DNA of 64,000 nt from Lytechinus pictus (Eukaryota), in NCBI RefSeq assembly GCF_037042905.1, contig NC_087255.1, positions 17,236,001-17,300,000 on the forward strand, read 5' to 3'. Position 1 is the first letter of the stretch. Each line of letters begins with the position of its first letter. The position numbers and the translations under genes were made by a program. Below, piece after piece: positions 2,620 through 35,398 of this stretch. The notes beneath the pieces were generated by a model. It made no database searches and was not told the DNA's origin. It saw nothing but the letters and a program-made list of their open reading frames with translations.

Positions 2620-4425
2620 CATGGGTGTCGATCGGTATTCTTGGTTGGGGGGGATGATTCACACAAAAGTTCTTGTGGATGGGGATCTTTCAACATTACC
2701 CCCACTAAAATCACAAGTTAGGACATTTTGGAGTAATTGATATGCATGGTGTTCTTGGAAACTCCTTCATTGTTGTAGTGTACTGTACTTATATAATTTT
2801 TTTTTGAAAATTCAATTTGTGTTACAAGTAAGCCTATTCTAAACTCATACGAAAGAAAAAAATGACAAAAATTGTCTGGACCATGTGCATAGTGATCTGT
2901 TTACTGAGCATGATGTATACACAGGGGCGTCGATCCATTTTTCAGATTGGGGGGGGGGGGATCATGAATCAACGTTCCAAAGGCGCTCGATCATACAAAA
3001 CGAACAAACTCACCCACACACTAGGCCTATATTATATATATATATGCATACATATATATATGACTCATGAGAAATAGACACATATCTTACCCTCACCAAC
3101 AATGCGAGCGCGAAGCGCGAGCTGAATTTTTTTAGTATGACACGAAAACAGGAAAAATGTACCTGTTTAGGTTTGTTTGTAGTAACTCATGAGGAGCATA
3201 AATACATGAATCTCACTAGAGAGCGAGCTAAAAATTTCTTTATATTCTGACGTGAAAGCTTGATATTCTAAGCATTTTTGGTACCAATGATTAAGATGGG
3301 TATCTAGAAGAACAATAGATGCGAGCGCAAAGCGCCAGCTGAAAATTTTGATATTTCGATCTGGAAAAAAAAGACAGTTTAATGGACGCTTTTAATAAAG
3401 AACAAGATATATATATCCATCAAAAGATTATTGCAAATCGAAGCGGGAATTCTTTTGAGGTATAGAACTGAAAGCGGGACATTCTATTCACCTATTTAAT
3501 CATGAAAAGTATGGGGTTTTGGTACAGAAATGATGCAAGCGCGAAGCGCGAGCTGAAAATTTTTATATTCCAATCTGAAAAGCAGACATTTTGAGCACGA
3601 TTTTAAATAAAAATCGAGTTGGTATCTCAATCTCGCTTGCTGGTTTCAGTGTAGCATTACAATCTTATTTTTTAGTTGCACATGCGGAATTATTGGGAGG
3701 TGGCAAAACGATATGTTCCCCCCAAATATTTTCATTGGTGGGGTGATCGCCCCCCCCCCCCCCGAATCGACGCCTCTGTGTATACAATGTCTCTCTTAAA
3801 TCTAACCCGACTGGCAATATCTTTTTTCTTAAATGCATGATGATAACATGCAGATTCGGACCAATTAAGACTAGCACAAATTACAAACTATGTGGCTTCT
3901 CGTGCGCCATCGGGCTTACCGTCATTCCATAGAGCTATTACTGTATGTAATAGCTATATGGTCATTCCTTAGACGATTTATCTTGCCACCCTTTTACTCC
4001 CGTTTATTGTCCACCCTTTTGAATTAATTGATGTATTAAAATTATTTTTTTCACCACTGGTGGGATGGAACACCCTATCAACAAAAGTTGTTTTTCGTTG
4101 GGGTCCTTTTATGTCATGTGTTAAAAATATCATATACAAAAACATTTCACTCTTTTTCATCCTGAACCTCCACCCATCTGTTTAATAGTCCTGAAAAAGA
4201 ATGTTTTTAATTAATAACAATATACACAAATTGCGAAGGAAACAAACTGATTGATGACATAATCATCACTATAATTATCATGATCAAACTTTTAATTTTT
4301 TCATCATCATTATTATAATTTTTCTACCCTAAATTATTGGGGGGGATGATAATACAGGCCATCCCCCCCACTTGAAATATTGGGGGGGATATATCCCCCC
4401 ATCCCCCCCGTGATCGACACCCATG
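2620..4425. mobile_element. hAT-like non-autonomous element (outer member of a nested pair)
   Basis: TIR CATGGGTGTCGATC / GATCGACACCCATG. 8-bp TSD CCAACCAC (2612-2619, 4426-4433). G-run and C-runs lie just inside the TIRs. Confidence 0.85.
2922..3778 (+). mobile_element. hAT-like non-autonomous element with internal GCGAGCGCGAAGCGCGAGC repeats, nested
   Basis: TIR CAGGGGCGTCGAT / ATCGACGCCTCTG. 8-bp TSD TGTATACA (2914-2921, 3779-3786). Confidence 0.88.
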
Positions 4426-10711: not shown

Positions 10712-11255
10712 CCCGGGGGGGCCACTTACATTGACGAGTGGATACCATGCGCGACCAAAAAAACACGTAAAAAGGATGTCTTTTTCACGATAGGGCACGT
10801 TACGTACGTAACGTGATAAGGGTGTCAAAAACACAAAAATAATGAAAAAAGGGTATCTATTTCGCTAGAAAAATGACGTGTTTAGGGTCGAATTCGCGGG
10901 GATGATAAAACAAAATTAAAATGTTTTATAAAGGATGTCCTTTTTGCCCCAACACTTCGTGTTTAGAGTCCGATTTGCGAGAGGTGTAGAAGGTGGGGTC
11001 GTACTTAACCAAATAAGGTAAAGCCGACGGCCGAAGGACCCGTAACAATAAAACATTCCTGTACTTGTTTAGGGGTTCATTTCAGGAAACATGAGTATCG
11101 TTTTGTTTCCAATACTTGTTAAGGGTAGGGTTTCACACGCCAATACTTGTTAAGGGGTGCATTTTCAGTATATGGAAATTACGTGTTTAGGGTGCTTTTC
11201 GAGACCCCATGGTCGCGCATGGTATCCACTCGTGAATGGAAGTGGCCCCCCCGGG
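10712..11255 (+). mobile_element. CCCGGG-ended MITE, family A, copy 1
   Basis: ~45-bp TIR CCCGGGGGGGCCACTT..GAGTGGATACCATGCGCGACC. 8-bp TSD GAAAAAAC (10704-10711, 11256-11263). Confidence 0.92.
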
Positions 11256-11851
11256 GAAAAAACATGAATTTATATGTAGATTGCACATTGCACATTGATC
11301 AGAATAGAAACAAAGAAAATGATGAATTCCTATTTCGAATATACCAAACATACACGGGTACTTCATTATGACGCGAGACCGGAGCATTTTTTTAATAATG
11401 CTTACATATTTGCTACAGTCTTGAGTCTTGATCAAAAAGGGAATGTCAGGTTTGATAATACTTGACATCATAATCATTTCATGTCATTAATGTACTAATA
11501 GAATGCCTTGATAAATATATCCGGAACATTTGGGCTATTTCAAAGATAATAGCCTGTTTGTAATTAAATTATAAGAATTTCCTTTATGAATTTAATCTGA
11601 CTTAATAAAATAGCAAAACACACAGTGAAACACATTAATTGAAATTTGCGAAAATTTATTAAAGAATACCAAAGTTATGAATGCGAAATAGAAAATTTGT
11701 TTTAATACAGTAATAAAATATATTGAAAACTAAAAAAAATATAGTGCGATAAATTGTTGCACTATTTTACGAAATATGCAGTCACGAACCGTTAAAAATA
11801 GGGAGAATTCCCTGTTTTTATGAATCATTATAATGCATCGCCAGCGGTGAC

Positions 11852-12378
11852 CCGACAATTGCTCCGCCGACATCTGCTCCGCTGACAACTGCTACGCAAA
11901 ATACGACAACTGCTCCGCCGACAATTGCTCCGGACAGTTGCTCCGCCGACAGTTGCTCCGTCGACACTTGCTCCGCCGACAGTTGCTCCGTCGACACTTG
12001 CTCCGCCGATATTTGCTCCGTCGACATATGCTCCGCTGATATTTGCTCCGCCGACATCTGCTCCGCCGAAAATTGCTCCGCCGACATCTGCTCCGATTAT
12101 ACGACAATTGCTCCGCCGATTTTTGCTCCGCCGACATCTGCTCCGCCGATTTTTGCTCCGCCGACATCTGCTCCGCCGATAATTGCTCCGCCGACATCTG
12201 CTCCGCCGAAAATTGCATCGCGACAATTGCTCCGCCGATATCTGCTCCGTCAATGTTTGCTCCGCCGACATCTGCTCCGCCGAAAATTGCATCGCGACAA
12301 TTGCTCCGCCGATATCTGCTCCGTCAATGTTTGCTCCGCCGACATCTGCTCCGCCGTAAATTGCTCCGATATTGCGAC
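11852..12378 (+). repeat. Left arm: 15-bp tandem array (consensus ~GCTCCGCCGACAATT / GCTCCGCCGACATCT)
   Basis: Directly visible tandem units with diagnostic variants such as GCTACGCAAAATACGAC. Confidence 0.95.
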
Positions 12379-12503
12379 ATTTAAATTAATTCGTACTTTC
12401 ATGCGCATAACAATTGTAGCACAGGATGAAGACGTCAATTTACAAATGTGTATATTATAATATATATATTGCAAAGTAAATTTGATATATTACATGACAT
12501 AAA

Positions 12504-12656
12504 CAGGGGCCGCGGAACGGTTTTCAAAGTGGGGGCTGACCATGCTAAAAATCACAATCATATGGTCATTTTTACGTTTTTGTACACGGTTTTGGAAAAA
12601 AAGGGGGGAGGGGGGGGGGGGGCTGAAGCCCCCAGCCCCCGGTTCCGCGGCCCCTG
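12504..12656. mobile_element. Short hAT-like MITE nested in the foldback element
   Basis: Perfect 15-bp TIR CAGGGGCCGCGGAAC / GTTCCGCGGCCCCTG. The flanks are similar (..ACATAA) but not an exact TSD. Confidence 0.75.
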
Positions 12657-13213
12657 ATACATAACATAGAAAGAAATAGAAAAAAGGGATAAGCACAAAG
12701 GAGGGATAGATATTCTTAATTCTTATTCTTTGGGGGGCATTTGTTTAAGTTTTATTTCGTGCCTGGTGATTAAAATGAAAAAAAAATACGCGTGTTCATG
12801 TAATTATCATGACGGGACAAAAAAAAAATTCTTAGCGTCAAAATCGCTCTGGCGAAATATGCTCCGAAGTGGAGATATTTGCTCCAGGTGAAATTCAATA
12901 GGTATGCTTTATGTTTACAATAAAAAAAAATGCGTATAAATTTCCCCTTTCCAGGTTAATAACATCTCGTGCTTCGTGCTCGCATTATAAATTCAGTGCG
13001 ATGCGTTATTGGGTTTCATGAATATGTAACTATATTATTACTGGTATATATATGTGTATAATGTATATTATTGTCTTTTAGAAACAACATTATTTGTTTA
13101 TACGTTATGAGAGAGATACATACATATATTCATTTATTAAAATATATTTATATTGTTGCTATTGCACAGAATAGAAAAAAATACAACCGAAGTCTCGTCT
13201 TATAGTAACTCAC

Positions 13214-13370
13214 CAGTAGCGTAATGAGCCAACAAAAAAAATGGAGGGGGCCAGACAAGGATGACATTTAGTTTCCTTTCCTTTATTCTTTTTTTTTTCA
13301 TTGGTAGGGAGAATGGGGGGGGGGGGATCCGTGACCCCTAGCACGCCCCTCCCCTATCTGTACGCCAGTG
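13214..13370 (+). mobile_element. Short hAT-like MITE nested in the foldback element
   Basis: Ends CAGTAGCGTA / TACGCCAGTG with G- and C-tracts. A related copy lies at 46252-46503. Confidence 0.6.
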
Positions 13371-13603
13371 ATGATCATGCTTTCGTTTGAAACAAATTTA
13401 AAGAAAAAAGGTGCAAGGGTAGATAAGGCCCAAGACGTATTAAAAAATATTGATAAAAATATTAACAATTGTAATGCTGATAAATATACAATAAATCAAG
13501 CGGTAACCAATGAAAATTAATAGTGTGAAAGAACAAAACGAGAAAGAGGGAGAGAGAGGGGGGCGCAAATGTGTGGTGTATAAGTTGCTGGAAAGCAGAA
13601 GGG

Positions 13604-15397
13604 CAGGGGCTGATCTAGCCTTCGCCAATAGGAGGGGGGGGGGGGTTTATAGCCATATTTTCCCCGATCGGCCGCTCGATGATGATTTTGGTTTCTTTGA
13701 AGGGGTAGTCCTAAAGTCACTTAGCTTTATTCTTATAAATCAACATAAATATATAATATCATAATCCTTATTTATATAATGCGAGCGCGAAGCGCGAGCT
13801 AAATTTTAAAAGGAAATTTTATGTTTTTTTTTCTAAAATTGGAACATTCTGGTCAATGTTTGTTATCATGAGAAAGATGTGTATGCAATTAAATAATTAC
13901 TACGAACGAGAAGCGCGAGCAGAAATTAACTGATGGAAAAGGAACTTGTTAAAGATTGCTTGCAGATAGCCATGAAGACGTTAGATACTTTAAAAATCAT
14001 ATAAAGCGAGTGCGAAGCGCGAGCTGAAACATTTTGAAATTTTTACATAAAGAATGGAAAATTTCAATCAATTTTTGTAATCGTGAACAGGATAGCTATA
14101 TAACTAACCAATTTAAGCGAGCGCGAAGCGCGGGCGGAAAAAATCGAGATTTAGACCTAAAACGGGACACTCTATTCATGTTTTGTAAACCATGAAAAGA
14201 ATGAGTAATATGGGATCTTCCTAACTTGATAATGCGAGCACAAAGCGCGAGCAGAAAATTTTTGATATTGTGATCTGAAACTGGATAATGTTTTAAATAG
14301 AATAAACTATTTGATTTTCCGACGTAAAAAAGAGTCAATTTCTGCTCTATATTTCAAGCACTTTGTGAATTTGTGAGGTGGATATGGATTGCACTTAATG
14401 AAGAGCTGATATGTTCTATTATTACTTTGAGTTTTGACATATATAGGACCGGGACATCCTTAGGACATGTCATCATATGAAAATGATGACTATTTTCCTA
14501 TTCCTCTTGCTAAGCGCGAGACAAAACAAAAGGGACAATTTAATTTCTAAATTAATATCTTACTCATTAATGCCTAATGACGGCACGAAATCTGATGATA
14601 TTATGGTCTGAAAACTGGACATTTCAATTACTTTCGTAGTCATAAATAGGATGCATCAGTTAATATATTTTTAACCATGAATGCGAGCGCAAATCGCGAG
14701 CCAAATTTTTTGATAAACTGTCATTAAATGGGGGCTCCCTGGGTTAATACCCACTATGCATTATATACTGAGTGCCCTCCCCGGGGGTATAGGTTTCTAT
14801 AGGGTTTTTCCTCTTAAGTAGTTTATTTGTATATTCAATATTGAGAAATACATAACTCTCCATTCAAATGCGAGCGCAGCGCTAGCTGATACGTTTTGAC
14901 AATCAGACCTGAAAAGGGATATTTTGAAAACTTTACGGAATACACGAAAATAATAGGTACCTGATATATCAACATTTGCGAGTGCGCAGCGCGAGTAGAA
15001 AATGTTAAAATTCAGACCATAAAACTGACATTTTTACAGAGCACTTTTAAAAAATCAATTTTTAAATCACACAAAACAATGAAAGTTCGATTCCCGAGGT
15101 GAAATATGTTTTGTATATTGACTTCCAAACTTGATATTTAAACTCCATAATTATTGAACAAGATATGAAAAATCACCTAACAGGCAATGCGAGCGCAAAG
15201 CGCGAGGGAAAATTTTATACAGTGACATGAAAGATTCTTTTTATTTTCCAAGTCTTTCCCTCATCTTATTTTATTTACTCGTCTTCCTCCTCTTCTTTTT
15301 ACTCTTCTCTTTCCATCTTTTTTTCTTTCTTTCCTTTTTTTTTCTTGTTCAGCCAGTGGGGGAGGGGCCCTCGGCCCCTCCCCTGGATCCGCCTATG
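13604..15397 (+). mobile_element. Larger hAT-like non-autonomous element with periodic GCGAGCGCGAAGCGCGAGC motifs, nested in the foldback element
   Basis: Imperfect TIR CAGGGGCTGATCT / GGATCCGCCTATG. About 10 copies of the motif are shared with 2922-3778. No exact TSD. Confidence 0.7.
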
Positions 15398-15685
15398 GAA
15401 GAGATATTGTGTCTAGCACCCCCCCCCCATTCTCTCCCCGCTCAAGACCGGATTGAAACCAATGATAATAATATATGAATAAAAATCCAGATTCACAATT
15501 CCAATGGGGAGTGTGTCATTCCCCTTCTGCGTTACAATTTGTCAAGACAGTGGCGGCGGCAGGGAGAACAATTTGGTTTTTTTAAGCAGAAAGCTGTGAT
15601 GATAGGGGAGAATGAAATAAATAGATAAAAATAATAAGAACAAAACAACAACAAAACAATTTGTAAGATGTTCATGCAATTGTAT

Positions 15686-16090
15686 TATCGGAGCACATGA
15701 CGGCGGAGCAATAGACTGCGGATCAATTGTCGTGAAGCAAATGTCGTATAATTGGAGCAATTTTCGGCGGAGCAATTATCGGCGGAGCAATTATCGGCGG
15801 AGCAAATATCGGCGGAGCAATTGTCGCGGAGCAATTGTCGTAAAATCGGAGCAGATGTCGGCGGAGCAATTATCGGCGGAGCAACTGTCGGCGGAGCAAA
15901 TATCGGCGGAGCAGATGTCGACGGAGCAAATATCGGCGGAGCAAGTGTCGACGGAGCAAATATCGGCGGAGCAAGTGTCGACGGAGCAACTGTCGGCGGA
16001 GCAACTGTCCGGAGCAATTGTCGGCGGAGCAGTTGTCGTATTTTGCGTAGCAATTGTCGGCGGAGCAGATGTCGGCGGAGCAATTGTCAT
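15686..16090 (-). repeat. Right arm: same 15-bp tandem array in inverted orientation
   Basis: Units read TCGGCGGAGCAA..; the variant GTCGTATTTTGCGTAGC (16035-16051) is the reverse complement of the left-arm variant. Confidence 0.95.
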
Positions 16091-16211
16091 GGAACCTCGC
16101 CAGCATGTTGCTCATCTAAACATTGTCCTTGGATTATTTTTCATACGGTGTCTAGATGACTTTCATATTGATGAAGGGTCAAGATGATTTTACAGAGTTA
16201 CACTATACATA

Positions 16212-16755
16212 CTCTCTAAATGCAAATGAGCTAATATGATCCCTAATCGTACTCTTCTCAGAGTGAGATGAGGGACCAGTCCTGATGGGGTGAGATTTCG
16301 GTCTTTCAGGAGCGAATTCTCAACCCCTATTGAAGTGAGAGTGTAAAAGGATGCACACATTTACTCCCCCAAAAAGGTTGAAACGCACTCATGAAAGACT
16401 GAAATCTTACTCCATCAAGACTGGTCCCTCACCTCACTCTGAGGGGAGTGTAATTAGGGGCCAGTGTCTGACTTTGAAACAGAGGGTCGTGGATTCGAAT
16501 TCCAGCCATGGCGTAATTTCCTTCAGCAAGAAACTCATCCACATTGTGCTGTACTCAACCCAGGTGAGGTGAATGGGTACCTGATAGGAAGAAAATCCTT
16601 TAATGCTTGAGCGCCTAGGCAGCTCAGCTAAAGCCGGGGTAATAATAATAGCAGGGCCCGCTGGTAGAATAGTTTTCGAAACTGAAGTGGCTATATATTG
16701 TTATTATTATTATTATATTATCATATTATAGATTGGCTCCTTTGCATTTAAAGAG
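16212..16755. mobile_element. Palindromic MITE (TA-flanked) interrupted by a SINE
   Basis: Arms CTCTCTAAATGCAAA..GAGTGAGATGAGGGACCAGTC / GACTGGTCCCTCACCTCACTC..TTTGCATTTAAAGAG. The right arm is split by 16460-16720. Confidence 0.7.
16460..16720 (+). mobile_element. 5'-truncated tRNA-derived SINE with a Deu/Nin-like core
   Basis: B-box-like GGATTCGAATTCC (16491-16503), core ACTCAACCCAGGTGAGGTGAATGGGTACC, a LINE-like 3' segment and an (ATT)n tail. Confidence 0.75.
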
Positions 16756-20109: not shown

Positions 20110-23100
20110 TTAGAGGGCGCTGTTTCCCTAGCGCAGAGAGCAATTTGTGTTGCTGAAATTTCTCTTCTTTCGTAGACGACTAAGAAAAGTTATTCTTTCA
20201 GGTACTAGTAAGTCTCGTTGCATGTGAATCTGTAATTATTATGAACTGACTTTTGTGCAATATTGAACTATGGCTTTTGGTGTATTTTCAAGTTTCATGA
20301 AACTCTGGATGCTTTTCATTTGTGTTGTTACCACGTATACCTGTTTGCAGTGTGTTAAACCGAAGAGTATTATCTTCTCAAACGACTTTGAACTTGGAAG
20401 AAGGTCGTTTGGTCAAACTGAGGATAAAATGACCACTCTAATCGAGCAACGGACAATAGACTTACCTCGGCGCCTCACGTACTCAGTGAATGATCTTTAT
20501 AGGTTACGTAACAAACAAAAGGTGCCGTTGCCATCACAAACGAAGTTGGTTGCTAAGCAGTACGGGATTACGAGAACTCGAGGATGCAGAGGGGGCTCTC
20601 GTAAACTGCGAAAAATACCCGTTCGCGTAAATTATCGAAACGATGGACTAAGAGATCCCTCCCAAAAGAGATCATCTATTGATCGATCGAACTTGATATC
20701 CATCTCACCCTTACATGTGACAAATGAGAAAGAGAAGAAACATAAAAAATACGATTTCCCCCGTATTTTCATGTCTAATCTCAGGTCTCTATCGAACAAG
20801 TTTGACGAATTTGAAACTTTGATCCAAATAAACAAACTGGAAGTGTGCGCCATTACCGAGACATGGTTCACAGCGGATACAGCAAACTCTTTCAATGTGG
20901 ATGGATTCTTACATTTCTCAAAATGCCGTACTAATCGCAAAGGAGGGGGTGTCTCTCTGTACATTAGTGACGGCATGCAGCCGAGAACTGTTTCCATACC
21001 CGTCCCAGAAGACTTAGAGGTTGTGTGGTGTAAAATCCGCCCTTTTCGGCTTCCAAGAGATGTTTCTGAAGTGTATCTCGCTGCTGTATATTCACCTCCC
21101 AACAATGACAAAGAGCAAGAGCTCGTTGATCACATCATCAGCACTATTGACGAGTTGACATCTCATCATCCAGATGCCGGTTTTGCTATCATGGGCGATT
21201 TTAACCGACTTAATACGGATGTGATCTGCTCCAACACGAGTCTTGTCCAGGTTGTTAATTCACCAACGAGGGATGAAGCTATACTCGACAAGGTACTGAC
21301 GAATATGACGAAGTTCTACGATTCACCAGTGATTACCTCACCTGTTGGCATGAGCGACCATAATTCTATCATTTGGACACCATCGTCAACAAGTGAATAT
21401 ATGCCAAACAAAATGTCCATACGTGTTGTCAGACCAATGCGTGACTCCGATCTGACATCTTTTGGCCAGTGGATATCGTCGAATGACTGGTCATGTGTTA
21501 CAGACGCCTTGACAGCATCAGAAAAATGTGAGGCCTTTTACTCATCTCTCTTTTCAGCCATGGATGCTTACATGCCCTCAAAGACGGTAAAGATTCATGT
21601 CAGGGATAAACCTTGGGTTACACCCGAGATCAAGTCCCTCATAACAAGACGTCAGCACCTTTTTGCTAGTGGCCCGGAGAAAGACTGGAAAGCCTGCAGA
21701 AACAGAGTCATAAGATCCATCAAAGTAGCAAAGGCTCGTTTCTACCATGATCGTATTGCCCAACTTAAGACAGATGACCCTGCTTCTTGGTATAGGCATA
21801 TCAAGGTCATGACCTCCCAACAAAAGTCCAGTCAAATAATTCAAGCTCCAGGGATTCATCAGCTGGAAACTGTAAAGGTAGCTAACGCCATCAACAGGCA
21901 CTTTTCTCAAGTTGCTGCTGACATTCCTCAACTGGATTTTTCGAAATTACCAACCTTCCTCCCATCACAAACGGCGCCCCCTGTTGTCCAACCGTGGGAA
22001 GTGTATCGTGAACTTAAACGTATCAAACCAGGAAAGTCGTCAGGTCCAGATGGAATTCCTGCAAGATTGATCAAGATGTTTGCCTGTGAACTCAGTTCTC
22101 CATTATGCAGCATCCTGAACAGTTCGTATGCGGAGGGTGTAGTGCCTACTAGATGGAAACAGGCAATAGTAGTGCCAGTTCCTAAAGAACAACCTGCCAG
22201 AATCGACAAGCTGAGACCCATAGCTCTCACCGACCACTTCGCGAAGGTTGCAGAATTGTTCATCACGAAGTGGCTAATGACTGATATATCACCGGTCCTT
22301 GATGTGAAACAGTTTGGAAGTAGGCCAGGTAGATCAACAACCCACTGTCTTGTTGACATTTTGAACTTCCTAGCCAAACATACCGATAAGTTATCAACTT
22401 CTGTTACACTAGTCACAACCGACTTTTCAAAGGCTTTTGACCGAGTAGACCATTCTATCGTCATTTCGAAGCTTATTGATCTCTGTTGTCGTCCATGTAT
22501 CATCCCATGGATCATAGACTTCCTCACTGGTCGTACCCAGTGCGTCCGCTACCAAGGTGTCATATCAGACATTACTCCTATGAGCGCAGGTGTACCACAA
22601 GGTACACGGCTTGGCCCGGTGCTCTTCCTAGTTCTTATCAACGATGCTCTAGCATCATCCAAAATGGAGTTATGGAAATATGTAGATGATATGACACTAG
22701 GTGAAGTGAAAACGAGGGGTGCAGCCAGTGAGGTACAAGACACACTTGATGAGCTAAATGTATGGTGTAATACAAATAAAATGAACTTGAATGCCAGTAA
22801 ATGTCAAGTGATGAGAGTGGACTTTGGGAAGAATCCACCCCCACCACTGATTGTTGAAATAGGCAACCAGACCCTGAACGAAGTAAATGTGATGAAAATA
22901 CTTGGTATCCTTATCCAATCAGACCTGAAATGGAATGACCACATTAGTTCAATGATAGCTAAGGCTAACAGGCGAATTTACATGTTGAGGCAGCTCAGAC
23001 CTTTTAAACTCCAACAGGGTGATCTACTGACCATTTATACTGGTTACGTGAGGCCTTTGGTGGAGTATGCTGTGCCAGTTTGGCACCCAGGTCTGACTAC

Positions 23101-24088
23101 CCAACAGCGAGCACAAATCGAAAGAATACAGAAACGATCTCTCCGAATTATTCTTGGCCCACTGTACATCACCTATGAGAATGCCCTACAAATCACAAAC
23201 CTGAAATCACTCGAATTAAGACGACGGGACTTGTGTATCAAATTTGCCAAGTCCCTACAAAACTCACCCACCTTCAGATCCTGGTTGCCTAATCCTAGAC
23301 TAAACACAAAATCACTCCGAAGAATTGCTCCCTACGATCAGATTAAATGCAGAACACAAAGGTACAAACTTAGTCCAATCCCATATCTAATTAGCTTATT
23401 GAATGAATCCTAGATAAAAAAGACAATCAGTTTGTTGTGATCTGTATTATGACCTCTTCCTAAATCCTATTTTTTTTTCATATCTCCTCTCTCTCTCTCT
23501 CTTTCTTCTTTTTCTTTCTCACCCTCCATCTCCATCTCTTTCTCTTTCTCTCGCTCTCTTTCCCTTCATCCATCATTCTCTCCAATTCTTTCTCTATCTC
23601 ACCATGCAATGTGACTTATTATTATTATTGAATTAGAATAATCAGCGACTACCTGTAATGTTTCAGTAAAACGAAATAAGTATACAAAACTCTCTGTATA
23701 TAAAACTTTATTCTAATTATTTACCCATTGTTACCCACTTCCATTTCTCCTTATACTCTGAATACGTTACTAATTCGAAATATCGATATTCTCAAGTCAA
23801 ATTTATCCAATCCAATTCACTTACATCATAAATCCTTCCAATCCACTTTCTCGTATACATGTACTATATCTTAAGCAAATTTTGAAACCTCTGCAATTAC
23901 TTATATTTGAAAATATTATGTTGATTCATATTAACCCCCAAAGTACATTTTTTCATGCTTTGTGTATTTTTATAATTCTATTTTGATACTGTTATGTTTT
24001 ATGTTGTTTTTTAATGTAAAAGTTCTGTACAATTCAGCTCTTGCTGCGAACAGTCTTTGAATAAAATACCATTATTATTATTATTATT
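20110..24088 (+). mobile_element. Near full-length CR1/L2-group LINE (5' boundary approximate)
   Basis: The ORF is followed by a ~650-bp 3' UTR with a CT-rich tract, a small hairpin CAGC-TCTT-GCTG (24035-24046), AATAAA and an (ATT)6 tail (24071-24088). The 5' end and TSD are not clearly resolved. Confidence 0.85.
20270..23413 (+). CDS. Non-LTR retrotransposon polyprotein (APE endonuclease + reverse transcriptase), CR1/L2 group, intact
   Basis: 1047-aa uninterrupted ORF. APE motifs: SNLRSL, ITETWF, GGGV, AVYSPP, GDFN, ILD, SDH. RT motifs: SGPDGI, LRPIAL, QFG, DFSKAFD, GVPQGTRLGP, YVDD, ILG. The C-terminus (IERIQKRSLRII...LELRRRDLC...RTQRYKLSPIP) is typical of CR1-like LINEs. Confidence 0.96.
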   Translation: MAFGVFSSFMKLWMLFICVVTTYTCLQCVKPKSIIFSNDFELGRRSFGQTEDKMTTLIEQRTIDLPRRLTYSVNDLYRLRNKQKVPLPSQTKLVAKQYGITRTRGCRGGSRKLRKIPVRVNYRNDGLRDPSQKRSSIDRSNLISISPLHVTNEKEKKHKKYDFPRIFMSNLRSLSNKFDEFETLIQINKLEVCAITETWFTADTANSFNVDGFLHFSKCRTNRKGGGVSLYISDGMQPRTVSIPVPEDLEVVWCKIRPFRLPRDVSEVYLAAVYSPPNNDKEQELVDHIISTIDELTSHHPDAGFAIMGDFNRLNTDVICSNTSLVQVVNSPTRDEAILDKVLTNMTKFYDSPVITSPVGMSDHNSIIWTPSSTSEYMPNKMSIRVVRPMRDSDLTSFGQWISSNDWSCVTDALTASEKCEAFYSSLFSAMDAYMPSKTVKIHVRDKPWVTPEIKSLITRRQHLFASGPEKDWKACRNRVIRSIKVAKARFYHDRIAQLKTDDPASWYRHIKVMTSQQKSSQIIQAPGIHQLETVKVANAINRHFSQVAADIPQLDFSKLPTFLPSQTAPPVVQPWEVYRELKRIKPGKSSGPDGIPARLIKMFACELSSPLCSILNSSYAEGVVPTRWKQAIVVPVPKEQPARIDKLRPIALTDHFAKVAELFITKWLMTDISPVLDVKQFGSRPGRSTTHCLVDILNFLAKHTDKLSTSVTLVTTDFSKAFDRVDHSIVISKLIDLCCRPCIIPWIIDFLTGRTQCVRYQGVISDITPMSAGVPQGTRLGPVLFLVLINDALASSKMELWKYVDDMTLGEVKTRGAASEVQDTLDELNVWCNTNKMNLNASKCQVMRVDFGKNPPPPLIVEIGNQTLNEVNVMKILGILIQSDLKWNDHISSMIAKANRRIYMLRQLRPFKLQQGDLLTIYTGYVRPLVEYAVPVWHPGLTTQQRAQIERIQKRSLRIILGPLYITYENALQITNLKSLELRRRDLCIKFAKSLQNSPTFRSWLPNPRLNTKSLRRIAPYDQIKCRTQRYKLSPIPYLISLLNES

Positions 24089-35186: not shown

Positions 35187-35398
35187 GGTGACACGGTATT
35201 TGCTCCGACGACAATTGCCCCGTGCTTTATTTCGTCGAAGATGAATCGTTAGTGTTAGGGTTGCAATAAGTTTTATGTTATGTTCATGGTTAGGTTTAGG
35301 ATAGGGTACTGTGATAAATCCGGGTTGAAGTTGGTCATTCCATTAGTTTGTGAAATTCACAGCGGAGCAATTGTCGACGGAGCAAAAGTCACGTAACC
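35187..35398. mobile_element. Miniature relative of the 15-bp-unit foldback element
   Basis: GGTGAC..TTTGCTCCGACGACAATTG / CAATTGTCGACGGAGCAAA..GTAACC. Flanks ATTCATTTT / ATTGATTTT. Confidence 0.75.

What the first reader, a model, noticed from the sequence alone, without database searches (positions are those of the whole stretch)
11838..16104. Complete 4.25-kb foldback transposon whose arms are ordered arrays of 15-bp units (TU-like), carrying nested cargo
Seen: two 15-bp arrays 3.3 kb apart are not independent minisatellites. They are reverse complements that share the same order of rare variant units (GCTACGCAAAATACGAC, GCTCCGGACAG, GCTCCGATT(A/T)TACGAC). They end in GGT...ACC and are bracketed by a perfect 8-bp TSD, TCGCCAGC. 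Arm lengths differ (~530 vs ~410 bp) through gain or loss of units. The middle has no transposase: ~2.1 kb is three nested MITEs and ~1.2 kb is AT-rich filler. Known: sea-urchin TU elements are foldback transposons with 15-bp tandem outer domains and heterogeneous middles. Inference: this is a non-autonomous, modular carrier of arbitrary DNA whose transposase, possibly Mutator- or Merlin-like given the GG ends and 8-9-bp TSD, is encoded elsewhere. The 15-mer may be an arrayed transposase-binding site.
Basis: partly seen in the sequence, partly recalled or inferred. Interest (0 to 1): 0.75.

Follow-up and report, generated by a model that had tools for sequence, protein, structure and literature searches.

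The report
TU-type foldback transposon, non-coding copy
This is a real, recently mobile but protein-less "foldback" jumping gene of the kind described in sea urchins in the 1980s; it is one of about 240 copies, and its interior is the family's shared body rather than private cargo.

Summary
Window 11846-16096 is a 4,251-bp element. Its two arms (525 and 410 bp) are inverted arrays of a 15-bp unit with the same order of rare variant units. It ends GGT...ACC and is flanked by a perfect 8-bp duplication, TCGCCAGC.

It is a non-autonomous foldback DNA transposon. The genome holds 238 left-type and several hundred right-type ends. Of 30 full copies examined, 20 have perfect 8-bp target duplications, 2 have 7/8, 5 have 9 bp and 3 have none.

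The middle is not cargo picked up by this copy. Ten other copies carry the same interior at 90-99% identity, each at its own site. All 29 aligned copies share a core of about 2.45 kb. Subfamilies differ by one deletion, nested insertions of other repeats, and one inversion of the body relative to the two end 8-mers, GGTGACCC and GGTTCCAT.

No transposase was found in any copy. No Merlin, MULE, P or hAT domain hit lies inside about 80 paired copies, so the superfamily stays open.

It matches the TU elements of Strongylocentrotus in architecture, so it is a new member of a known kind. Other first-reader notes of this scan flag similar TU-like elements elsewhere in this genome.

The parts
11838..11845 (.). 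Left copy of the 8-bp target-site duplication, TCGCCAGC
   Evidence: Read directly; identical to 16097-16104.
11846..11853 (+). Left-type terminal 8-mer, GGTGACCC
   Evidence: The 26-mer built on it has 238 genome matches at up to 2 mismatches, against 0 for the control.
11846..12370 (+). Left arm: 32 units of the 15-bp repeat, consensus GACATTTGCTCCGCC
   Evidence: TRF, unit parse, arm length.
12371..12898 (.). Left inner part of the family core. It includes two degenerate 15-mer units at about 12860-12893 and ends at the junction where other subfamilies carry 2.8-3.5 kb more.
   Evidence: Collinear blocks shared with subfamilies B, C and D.
12504..12656 (.). 153-bp MITE-like insert with a perfect 15-bp terminal inverted repeat (CAGGGGCCGCGGAAC). 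It is present in all subfamilies, so it is old.
   Evidence: the repeat finder pair I7. Contig word depth is 100-1000 times that of family-specific parts in three runs (bins 12379-12772). It lies inside blocks shared with B, C and D.
12900..13601 (.). Central part of the family core, shared by all subfamilies at 88-89% identity
13602..15397 (.). 1.8-kb block specific to subfamily A, flanked by the 4-bp direct repeat GAAG. It is made of very abundant repeats and holds eight copies of a 19-bp GC-rich motif, the first five spaced 104-121 bp apart.
   Evidence: B, C and D read straight through the empty site. Depth is 40,000-450,000 against 100-300 for neighbouring parts.
14734..14813 (.). 80-bp indel present only in this copy and copy L031
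   Evidence: Alignment against L032 and L033.
15398..15686 (.). Right inner part of the family core
15687..16096 (-). Right arm: 25 units of the same 15-bp repeat in inverted orientation, ending with the right-type terminal 8-mer (GGTTCCAT on the minus strand)
16097..16104. Right copy of the 8-bp target-site duplication, TCGCCAGC
   Evidence: Read directly.

Best explanation
Window 11846-16096 is one copy of a young, non-coding foldback DNA transposon family of the TU type.

Shown:
- The whole 4.25-kb unit inserted here by cut-and-paste-style integration that duplicated 8 bp of target.
- It belongs to subfamily A of a family of roughly 240 full-length copies.
- Every paired copy has one GGTGACCC end and one GGTTCCAT end. 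Each end is followed by an array of 9-47 units of a 15-bp repeat.
- All copies descend from one non-coding ancestor. Subfamily A arose by deletion of about 3 kb at element position 1053/1055 plus insertion of a 1.8-kb repeat block.
- Subfamilies B and C carry the body inverted relative to the end 8-mers.

Inferred:
- The element is moved in trans by a DDE transposase encoded elsewhere. The enzyme would recognise the terminal GGT-containing 8-mers and bind the invariant 11 bases of the 15-mer (TGCTCCGCCGA, then a 4-base variable spacer). Each arm would then be an array of binding sites.
- The long inverted arms occasionally recombine, which would explain the inversion and the three copies without target duplications.
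- The superfamily of the transposase is not established. Merlin and Mutator/Foldback-type are the leading candidates.
For: Structure.

Mobility as a unit:
- Of 30 full copies, 20 have perfect 8-bp TSDs, 2 have 7/8 and 5 have 9-bp TSDs, all different sequences.

Copy number and end asymmetry:
- 238 left-type and 647 right-type 26-mers, control 0.
- About 80 of the 100 listed left-type ends face a right-type end 1.4-17.5 kb away. No left-left or right-right facing pairs occur.

Shared interior:
-.
- The A-specific insertion has a clean empty site in B, C and D and a GAAG flank.
- The junction is shared in B and C.

Inversion:
- 13 of 28 copies have the core in minus orientation relative to the end 8-mers.
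- One change on the tree suffices to explain this.

Youth:
- The median terminal branch is 0.006 changes per site. This copy's branch is 0.003.

No coding capacity:
-.
- The large ORFs in longer copies are a nested LTR element, a Tc1 transposase and a LINE reverse transcriptase.

Unit conservation:
- Over 1,167 units, positions 1, 2, 4, 7-13 and 15 are at least 98% conserved. Positions 3, 5, 6 and 14 are 62%, 42%, 76% and 84%.

Literature:
- Tandem repeats in the arms of the foldback-like element Galileo carry extra transposase-binding sites, and most foldback elements are assigned to Mutator, with exceptions (PMC4079207).
Against: - No autonomous copy was found, so trans-mobilisation and the binding-site role of the 15-mer are inferences.
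- Position-specific variation in the unit could instead reflect amplification of a few ancestral variant units (a higher-order repeat) rather than selection for binding.
- Three copies lack TSDs.
- The empty-site allele could not be shown. Public runs were available only as short contigs that barely cover the unique flanks, and the assembly has no empty-site sequence.
- The comparison with TU elements rests on my recollection of the 1983 and 1985 papers, which the library does not hold.
Confidence: 0.85

Rival explanations
1. One reading: the arms are a modular vehicle that picks up arbitrary DNA, and the middle of this copy is its own nested cargo.
For: - Interiors differ in length from 1.45 to 18 kb.
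- Three or four subfamilies differ by kilobases at one junction.
- Nested Tc1, LINE and LTR elements occur in some copies.
Against: - All 29 aligned copies share the same core blocks in the same order.
- The segments specific to B, C and D are a mosaic of related sequence with the same left and right junctions.
- This copy's interior recurs in 10 other copies.
- Differences are explained by deletion, ordinary nested insertions with their own flanking repeats and one inversion.
Confidence: 0.1
2. The family is mobilised by a Merlin (IS1016/IS1595-like) transposase.
For: - From my knowledge of Feschotte 2004, an 8- or 9-bp TSD mixed within one family and ends starting with GG are the hallmarks of Merlin. 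Here 22 copies have 8 bp and 5 have 9 bp.
- The genome has at least 53 Merlin DDE matches, several with intact ORFs of 340-500 aa.
Against: - None of the Merlin hits on contigs C1-C9 lies inside any of about 80 paired copies.
- None on C1-C2 lies within 20 kb inward of a GGTTCCAT-type end.
- I could not read the ends of the Merlin copies.
Confidence: 0.3
3. The family is mobilised by a Mutator-superfamily transposase of the Foldback/NOF, Phantom or Rehavkus type.
For: - Most foldback elements are assigned to Mutator (PMC4079207).
- Phantom has 8-10-bp TSDs and Rehavkus has 9-bp TSDs with minisatellites (PMC6446971).
- The genome has MULE-domain ORFs of 720-890 aa.
- Earlier unchecked notes (s1-323349, s1-323391) place other foldback families of this genome in Mutator.
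Against: - 8 bp is the main TSD here, whereas 9 bp or more is typical of MULEs.
- No MULE-domain hit lies inside a paired copy.
- The Pfam MULE model may miss NOF-type enzymes.
Confidence: 0.3
4. The family is mobilised by a P-superfamily (Galileo-like) or hAT transposase, or by a less studied superfamily with 8-bp TSDs such as Zisupton or Novosib.
For: - 8 bp is the main TSD.
- Galileo is a foldback-like P element with binding sites in tandem arm repeats (PMC4079207).
- Intact P-like ORFs of 817-959 aa and hAT ORFs of 823 aa exist in the genome.
Against: - From my knowledge, GGT ends differ from the CA/YARNG ends usual for P and hAT.
- A 9-bp TSD in 5 copies is unusual for hAT.
- TSD positions 2 and 7 show no T/A bias.
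- No P or hAT hit lies inside a paired copy.
Confidence: 0.15
5. It is not a transposon: two minisatellites in inverted orientation produced by a local inverted duplication.
For: Only the bare architecture of this one locus.
Against: Hundreds of copies with identical ends at unrelated sites, each with its own 8- or 9-bp duplication.
Confidence: 0.01

Closest known systems
TU elements of Strongylocentrotus purpuratus (Liebermann et al. 1983, Nature 306:342; Hoffman-Liebermann et al. 1985, Mol Cell Biol 5:991). The 1983 paper is cited in PMC4079207; the details are from my memory.
   Same: - The host is a sea urchin.
- Long inverted arms whose outer domain is a tandem 15-bp repeat.
- An 8-bp target duplication.
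- A class of copies sharing a common middle that suffers deletions and insertions.
- Middle segments containing sequences repeated elsewhere in the genome.
- No transposase known.
   Different: - The host genus differs (Lytechinus, according to an unchecked scan note).
- Sequence homology of the 15-mer to TU1 could not be tested.
- Here the inner regions next to the arms are not inverted repeats of each other.
- The two extreme ends differ in a fixed way (GGTGACCC against GGTTCCAT).
- 9-bp TSDs occur in a minority of copies.
Drosophila Foldback (FB/NOF) elements, Mutator superfamily
   Same: - Long inverted arms made of short tandem repeats of variable number.
- Mostly non-coding copies.
- Arm-mediated rearrangement.
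   Different: - From memory, FB has 9-bp TSDs and units of 10, 20 and 31 bp.
- No MULE-type gene could be tied to this family.
Galileo (P superfamily) and Tetris (Drosophila virilis) foldback-like elements
   Same: - Tandem repeats inside long arms, which in Galileo carry extra transposase-binding sites.
- Tetris has 8-9-bp TSDs, a variable non-coding middle and no autonomous copy found (PMC4079207).
   Different: - From memory, Galileo has 7-bp TSDs and a THAP transposase.
- The repeat units of both are much longer than 15 bp.
Merlin/IS1016 superfamily
   Same: An 8- or 9-bp TSD within one family, and ends beginning with GG (from memory of Feschotte 2004).
   Different: No Merlin transposase was found between these ends. 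Arrays of a 15-bp unit are not a described Merlin feature, as far as I know.

Membership tests
TU-type foldback transposon | Long terminal inverted repeats whose outer domain is a tandem array of about 15-bp units | tested here: met
TU-type foldback transposon | 8-bp target-site duplication | tested here: met
   22 of 30 copies have 8 bp (20 perfect, 2 at 7/8) and 5 have 9 bp. That TU1 has 8 bp is from memory.
TU-type foldback transposon | Copies share a common middle that undergoes deletions and insertions, and the middles contain sequences dispersed elsewhere | tested here: met
TU-type foldback transposon | Sequence homology of the arm repeat or ends to TU1/TU2 | not testable with these tools
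   No TU sequence or Repbase/Dfam library is on hand, and the papers are not held.
Foldback/NOF (Mutator superfamily) | Autonomous copies encode a MULE-type DDE transposase | tested here: inconclusive
   There are 17 PF10551 matches in the genome, none inside about 80 paired copies on C1-C9. The autonomous copy may lie elsewhere or escape the model.
Foldback/NOF (Mutator superfamily) | TSD of 9 bp or more | tested here: not met
   8 bp in 22 of 27 copies with a TSD, and 9 bp in 5.
Merlin/IS1016 | 8- or 9-bp TSD and ends beginning with GG | tested here: met
Merlin/IS1016 | Autonomous copies encode an IS1595/Merlin DDE transposase between the same ends | tested here: inconclusive
   There are 53 PF12762 matches, none inside a paired copy or near a GGTTCCAT-type end on C1-C2. 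The ends of the Merlin copies could not be read.
hAT | Strict 8-bp TSD with nTnnnnAn bias, short ends starting YARNG, and a hAT dimerisation domain | tested here: not met
   9-bp TSDs occur in 5 copies. There is no T/A bias at TSD positions 2 and 7. The ends start GGT. No PF05699 hit lies inside a paired copy.
P superfamily (Galileo-like) | 7-8-bp TSD and a P/THAP9-type transposase in autonomous copies | tested here: inconclusive
   The TSD length is compatible. There are 41 PF21787 matches, none inside a paired copy.
MITE | Short (under about 800 bp), non-coding, with TIR and TSD | tested here: not met
   The element is 4.25 kb with arms of 410-525 bp. A related 212-bp MITE does exist at window 35187-35398.

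The most novel reading that the evidence does not exclude
TU-type foldback elements, whose transposase has never been identified, would form their own lineage, served by a non-Mutator enzyme (Merlin-like or an undescribed DDE type). That enzyme would read a fixed pair of different end 8-mers plus an array of 11-bp sites spaced every 15 bp. This very young family of about 240 copies, together with its sister family of several hundred copies, would be the handle to find it.
Probability: 0.3. Interest if true: 0.55.

Novelty: new member of a known kind. Interest (0 to 1): 0.3.

Why it matters
Foldback transposons with short-repeat arms have been known in sea urchins for forty years. As far as I know, their transposase and superfamily were never settled. 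This family gives a clean, young data set for that question:
- It has fixed asymmetric ends and mixed 8- and 9-bp target duplications.
- Its repeat unit has 11 nearly invariant bases.
- It has clear subfamilies made by deletion, nesting and one body inversion.

That makes the search for the enzyme and a binding-site test straightforward. For genome annotation, it shows that the "cargo" of such elements should be compared across copies before it is called captured DNA. Otherwise it is an ordinary repeat with no sign of a host function at this locus.

Tried and rejected
1. Looked for a transposase inside copies.
- ORFs of 130 aa or more were listed in 17 longer copies.
- Pfam scans covered the largest ORFs and 10 ORFs from the B, C and D middles.
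- The only hits were a nested LTR element, a Tc1 transposase and a LINE reverse transcriptase.

2. Compared the coordinates of Merlin, MULE, P and hAT domain hits with the listed ends (against 15, 16, 49). None co-locate. The lists cover only contigs C1-C9/C10, and C1-C2 for the wider end pattern.

3. Could not fetch the remaining large pairs or the transposase loci. I did not try to get them another way.

4. Tested for an empty site.
- The joined-flank pattern is absent from the assembly.
- Public runs were only short contigs with almost no cover of the unique flanks, so no presence/absence call is possible.

5. Tried to read the TU papers and Marquez & Pritham 2010. They are not held.

6. 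Considered frequent flip-flop of the body. Rejected, because one inversion explains the tree.

7. Considered that the arms of one element are kept identical by conversion. Outer-arm variants are shared by both arms within B and C copies, but this may equally be descent from one ancestor. Left open.

8. The interior of locus L010, the left end of the 17.5-kb pair, departs from the family after 798 bp and shows no coding signal.
Full report
**What is at the locus**

Window 11846-16096 is a 4,251-bp element.
- Tandem Repeats Finder reports period-15 arrays at 11852-12368 (34 copies) and 15754-16088.
- The repeat finder reports the outer 263 nt of the two arrays as 96% complementary.
- I cut both arms into units on the invariant core. 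The first 16 units follow the same order in both arms.
- The arms are 525 bp (32 units) and 410 bp (25 units).
- The element begins GGTGACCC and ends ATGGAACC. The 8-mer TCGCCAGC flanks it on both sides.

**It is a mobile family**

The window lies at C11:17236001-17300000 of an 812-Mb assembly.
- The left-end 26-mer occurs 238 times at up to two mismatches, and the right-end 26-mer 647 times. The reversed control gives none.
- Of the 100 left-type ends listed (contigs C1-C9), about 80 face a right-type end 1.4-17.5 kb away.
- I saw no left-left or right-right facing pair.
- I fetched 29 further full copies. Counting the window copy: 20 have a perfect 8-bp duplication, 2 have 7/8, 5 have a 9-bp duplication and 3 have none.
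- All the duplicated sequences differ, so these are independent insertions of whole elements.

**The middle is the family's body, not this copy's cargo**

- Ten other copies carry the same interior over its whole length at 90-99% identity.
- After orienting all copies on the interior, every one shares three blocks of the window copy: element positions 1-1053, 1055-1756 and 3553-4251.
- Subfamily A, to which this copy belongs, differs from the others in two ways.
  - At position 1053/1055 (window 12898/12900) it has 3 bp where subfamilies B, C and D have 2.8-3.5 kb. B and C begin and end that segment with the same junction sequences, and parts of it are shared between B and C and between C and D. 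This reads as a deletion in A.
  - A carries a 1.8-kb block (window 13602-15397) at a site that B, C and D read straight through. In A the block is flanked by GAAG on both sides.
- The only change narrower than the subfamily is an 80-bp indel (14734-14813), shared with one other copy.

**Evidence from public sequencing runs**

- Contigs from three DNA runs of one organism label give word depths of 40,000-450,000 over 13561-15333 and 12379-12772.
- The family-specific stretches 12773-13560 and 15531-15727 give 100-300. The arms give a few thousand to tens of thousands.
- Depth is not copy number. The contrast nonetheless shows that these two stretches belong to much more abundant repeat families.
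- One of them is a 153-bp element with a perfect 15-bp inverted repeat at 12504-12656.

**Inversion and age**

- In 13 of 28 copies (subfamilies B and C) the shared core lies in the opposite orientation relative to the two end 8-mers.
- A maximum-likelihood tree of a 650-column core segment recovers the subfamilies with strong support. It needs only one change of orientation.
- I read this as a single recombination between the inverted arms, or an exchange of the end 8-mers. Both isomers then transposed, since both carry target duplications.
- The three copies without duplications may come from exchange between copies. That is a guess.
- The median terminal branch is 0.006 changes per site, and this copy's branch is 0.003. 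The family was therefore active recently.

**Coding capacity**

- The window copy has no ORF with a Pfam match. The 113-154-aa ORFs in the arms are stop-free repeat artefacts.
- In longer copies the large ORFs belong to nested elements:
  - an LTR retroelement in the 18-kb copy;
  - a Tc1/mariner transposase and a LINE reverse transcriptase.
- Ten further ORFs from the B, C and D middles gave nothing.
- I then located Pfam domains of four superfamilies with 8-9-bp duplications: Merlin (53 matches), MULE (17), P (41) and hAT (62).
- None lies inside a paired copy on C1-C9. None on C1-C2 lies within 20 kb inward of any GGTTCCAT-type end.
I therefore could not read the remaining large pairs or the ends of the transposase-bearing elements, and I did not try another route.
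- The transposase remains unidentified.

**How it most likely works**

- Shown: insertion of the whole unit with an 8-bp (sometimes 9-bp) staggered cut; conserved and asymmetric ends; variable arm length (147-737 bp); no coding capacity.
- Inferred: mobilisation in trans.
- Over 1,167 units from all copies the consensus is GACATTTGCTCCGCC.
  - Eleven positions are at least 98% conserved. These include four positions that did not serve as my register anchor.
  - Positions 3, 5, 6 and 14 are only 62%, 42%, 76% and 84% conserved.
- This pattern fits an arrayed protein-binding site, as shown for the arm repeats of Galileo (PMC4079207). It could also be the legacy of a few amplified variant units.
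- The same core motif, with related GGT ends, occurs in a 212-bp MITE at window 35187-35398.
- It also occurs in a sister family whose right-type end differs by one base. The wider GGTTCCAT pattern has 1,044 hits, and most of the first 100 listed are this variant.

**Which superfamily**

- From my own knowledge, a mix of 8- and 9-bp duplications and ends starting GG are typical of Merlin.
- Most foldback elements are placed in Mutator (PMC4079207). Phantom and Rehavkus have 8-10- and 9-bp duplications (PMC6446971).
- GGT ends and the 9-bp cases speak against hAT.
- Nothing here decides between Merlin and Mutator. I give each about 0.3.

**Comparison with known elements**

- The architecture matches what I remember of the TU elements of Strongylocentrotus purpuratus: 15-bp outer repeats, an 8-bp duplication, a class with a common middle that suffers deletions and insertions, and middles containing dispersed repeats.
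- The library holds only a citation of the 1983 paper. I could not obtain a TU sequence, so homology is untested.
- An earlier, unchecked note of this scan names the genome as Lytechinus pictus. Other first-reader notes flag TU-like elements with 15-, 16- and 17-bp units elsewhere in it.
- A contig from a second organism label is identical to 127 nt of the right arm.

**Tests that failed to decide**

- The joined-flank (empty-site) sequence is not in the assembly.
- The public runs were short contigs that hardly cover the unique flanks, so presence/absence polymorphism could not be judged.

**Verdict**

The finding is real and well described. The "carrier of arbitrary cargo" reading is not supported. 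The element is a new member of a known kind, and its main open point is the missing transposase.

Noticed in passing
window 35187-35398: A 212-bp MITE whose ends (GGTGACAC... and ...ACGTAACC) and two subterminal TTGCTCCG units resemble those of the foldback family. It is flanked by a 9-bp duplication with one mismatch (ATTCATTTT and ATTGATTTT).
   Followed up: partly
genome-wide, e.g. G000 C1:6064175 and C1:6177722: A sister family whose right-type end differs by one base (GACATTTG instead of GACAATTG) makes up most of the listed GGTTCCAT-type ends (1,044 in all). Its other end is not the GGTGACCC type and is unknown.
   Followed up: no
window 20270-23413 (+): An intact 1,047-aa LINE ORF with endonuclease and reverse-transcriptase domains.
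   Followed up: partly
L038 3412-7964 (-), inside the foldback copy at G000 C8:32190408-32208870: A nested LTR retroelement. Its 965-aa ORF has integrase domains before the reverse transcriptase and RNase H, which is an unusual order. A neighbouring 547-aa ORF has a SCAN domain. I only observed it.
   Followed up: no
L049 2799-4247 (-) and L058 3327-4679 (+): An open 483-aa Tc1/mariner transposase ORF and a LINE reverse-transcriptase ORF, each nested in a foldback copy.
   Followed up: partly
L031, L052 and L054 (G000 C6:17661025-17665779, C5:9916727-9923107, C5:44247255-44252859): Three full copies have no target duplication. This could reflect exchange between copies or mis-paired ends in a cluster. 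C5:44.25-44.29 Mb holds several ends close together.
   Followed up: no
window 13781-15207: Eight same-strand copies of a 19-bp GC-rich motif (GCGAGCGCGAAGCGCGAGC and variants), the first five spaced 104-121 bp apart, plus one inverted copy at 12966-12989. Contig joints in public runs jump between these motifs, as expected for a very abundant short repeat.
   Followed up: partly
G000 C6:17788503-17804583: A cluster of about a dozen fragments matching the P-element/THAP9 RNase H-like domain within 16 kb.
   Followed up: no
window 11000-11393 and 16319-16712: Two unrelated, extremely abundant repeats (word depth about 1-2 million in public runs) lie 440 and 215 bp outside the element. They do not match each other.
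   Followed up: partly
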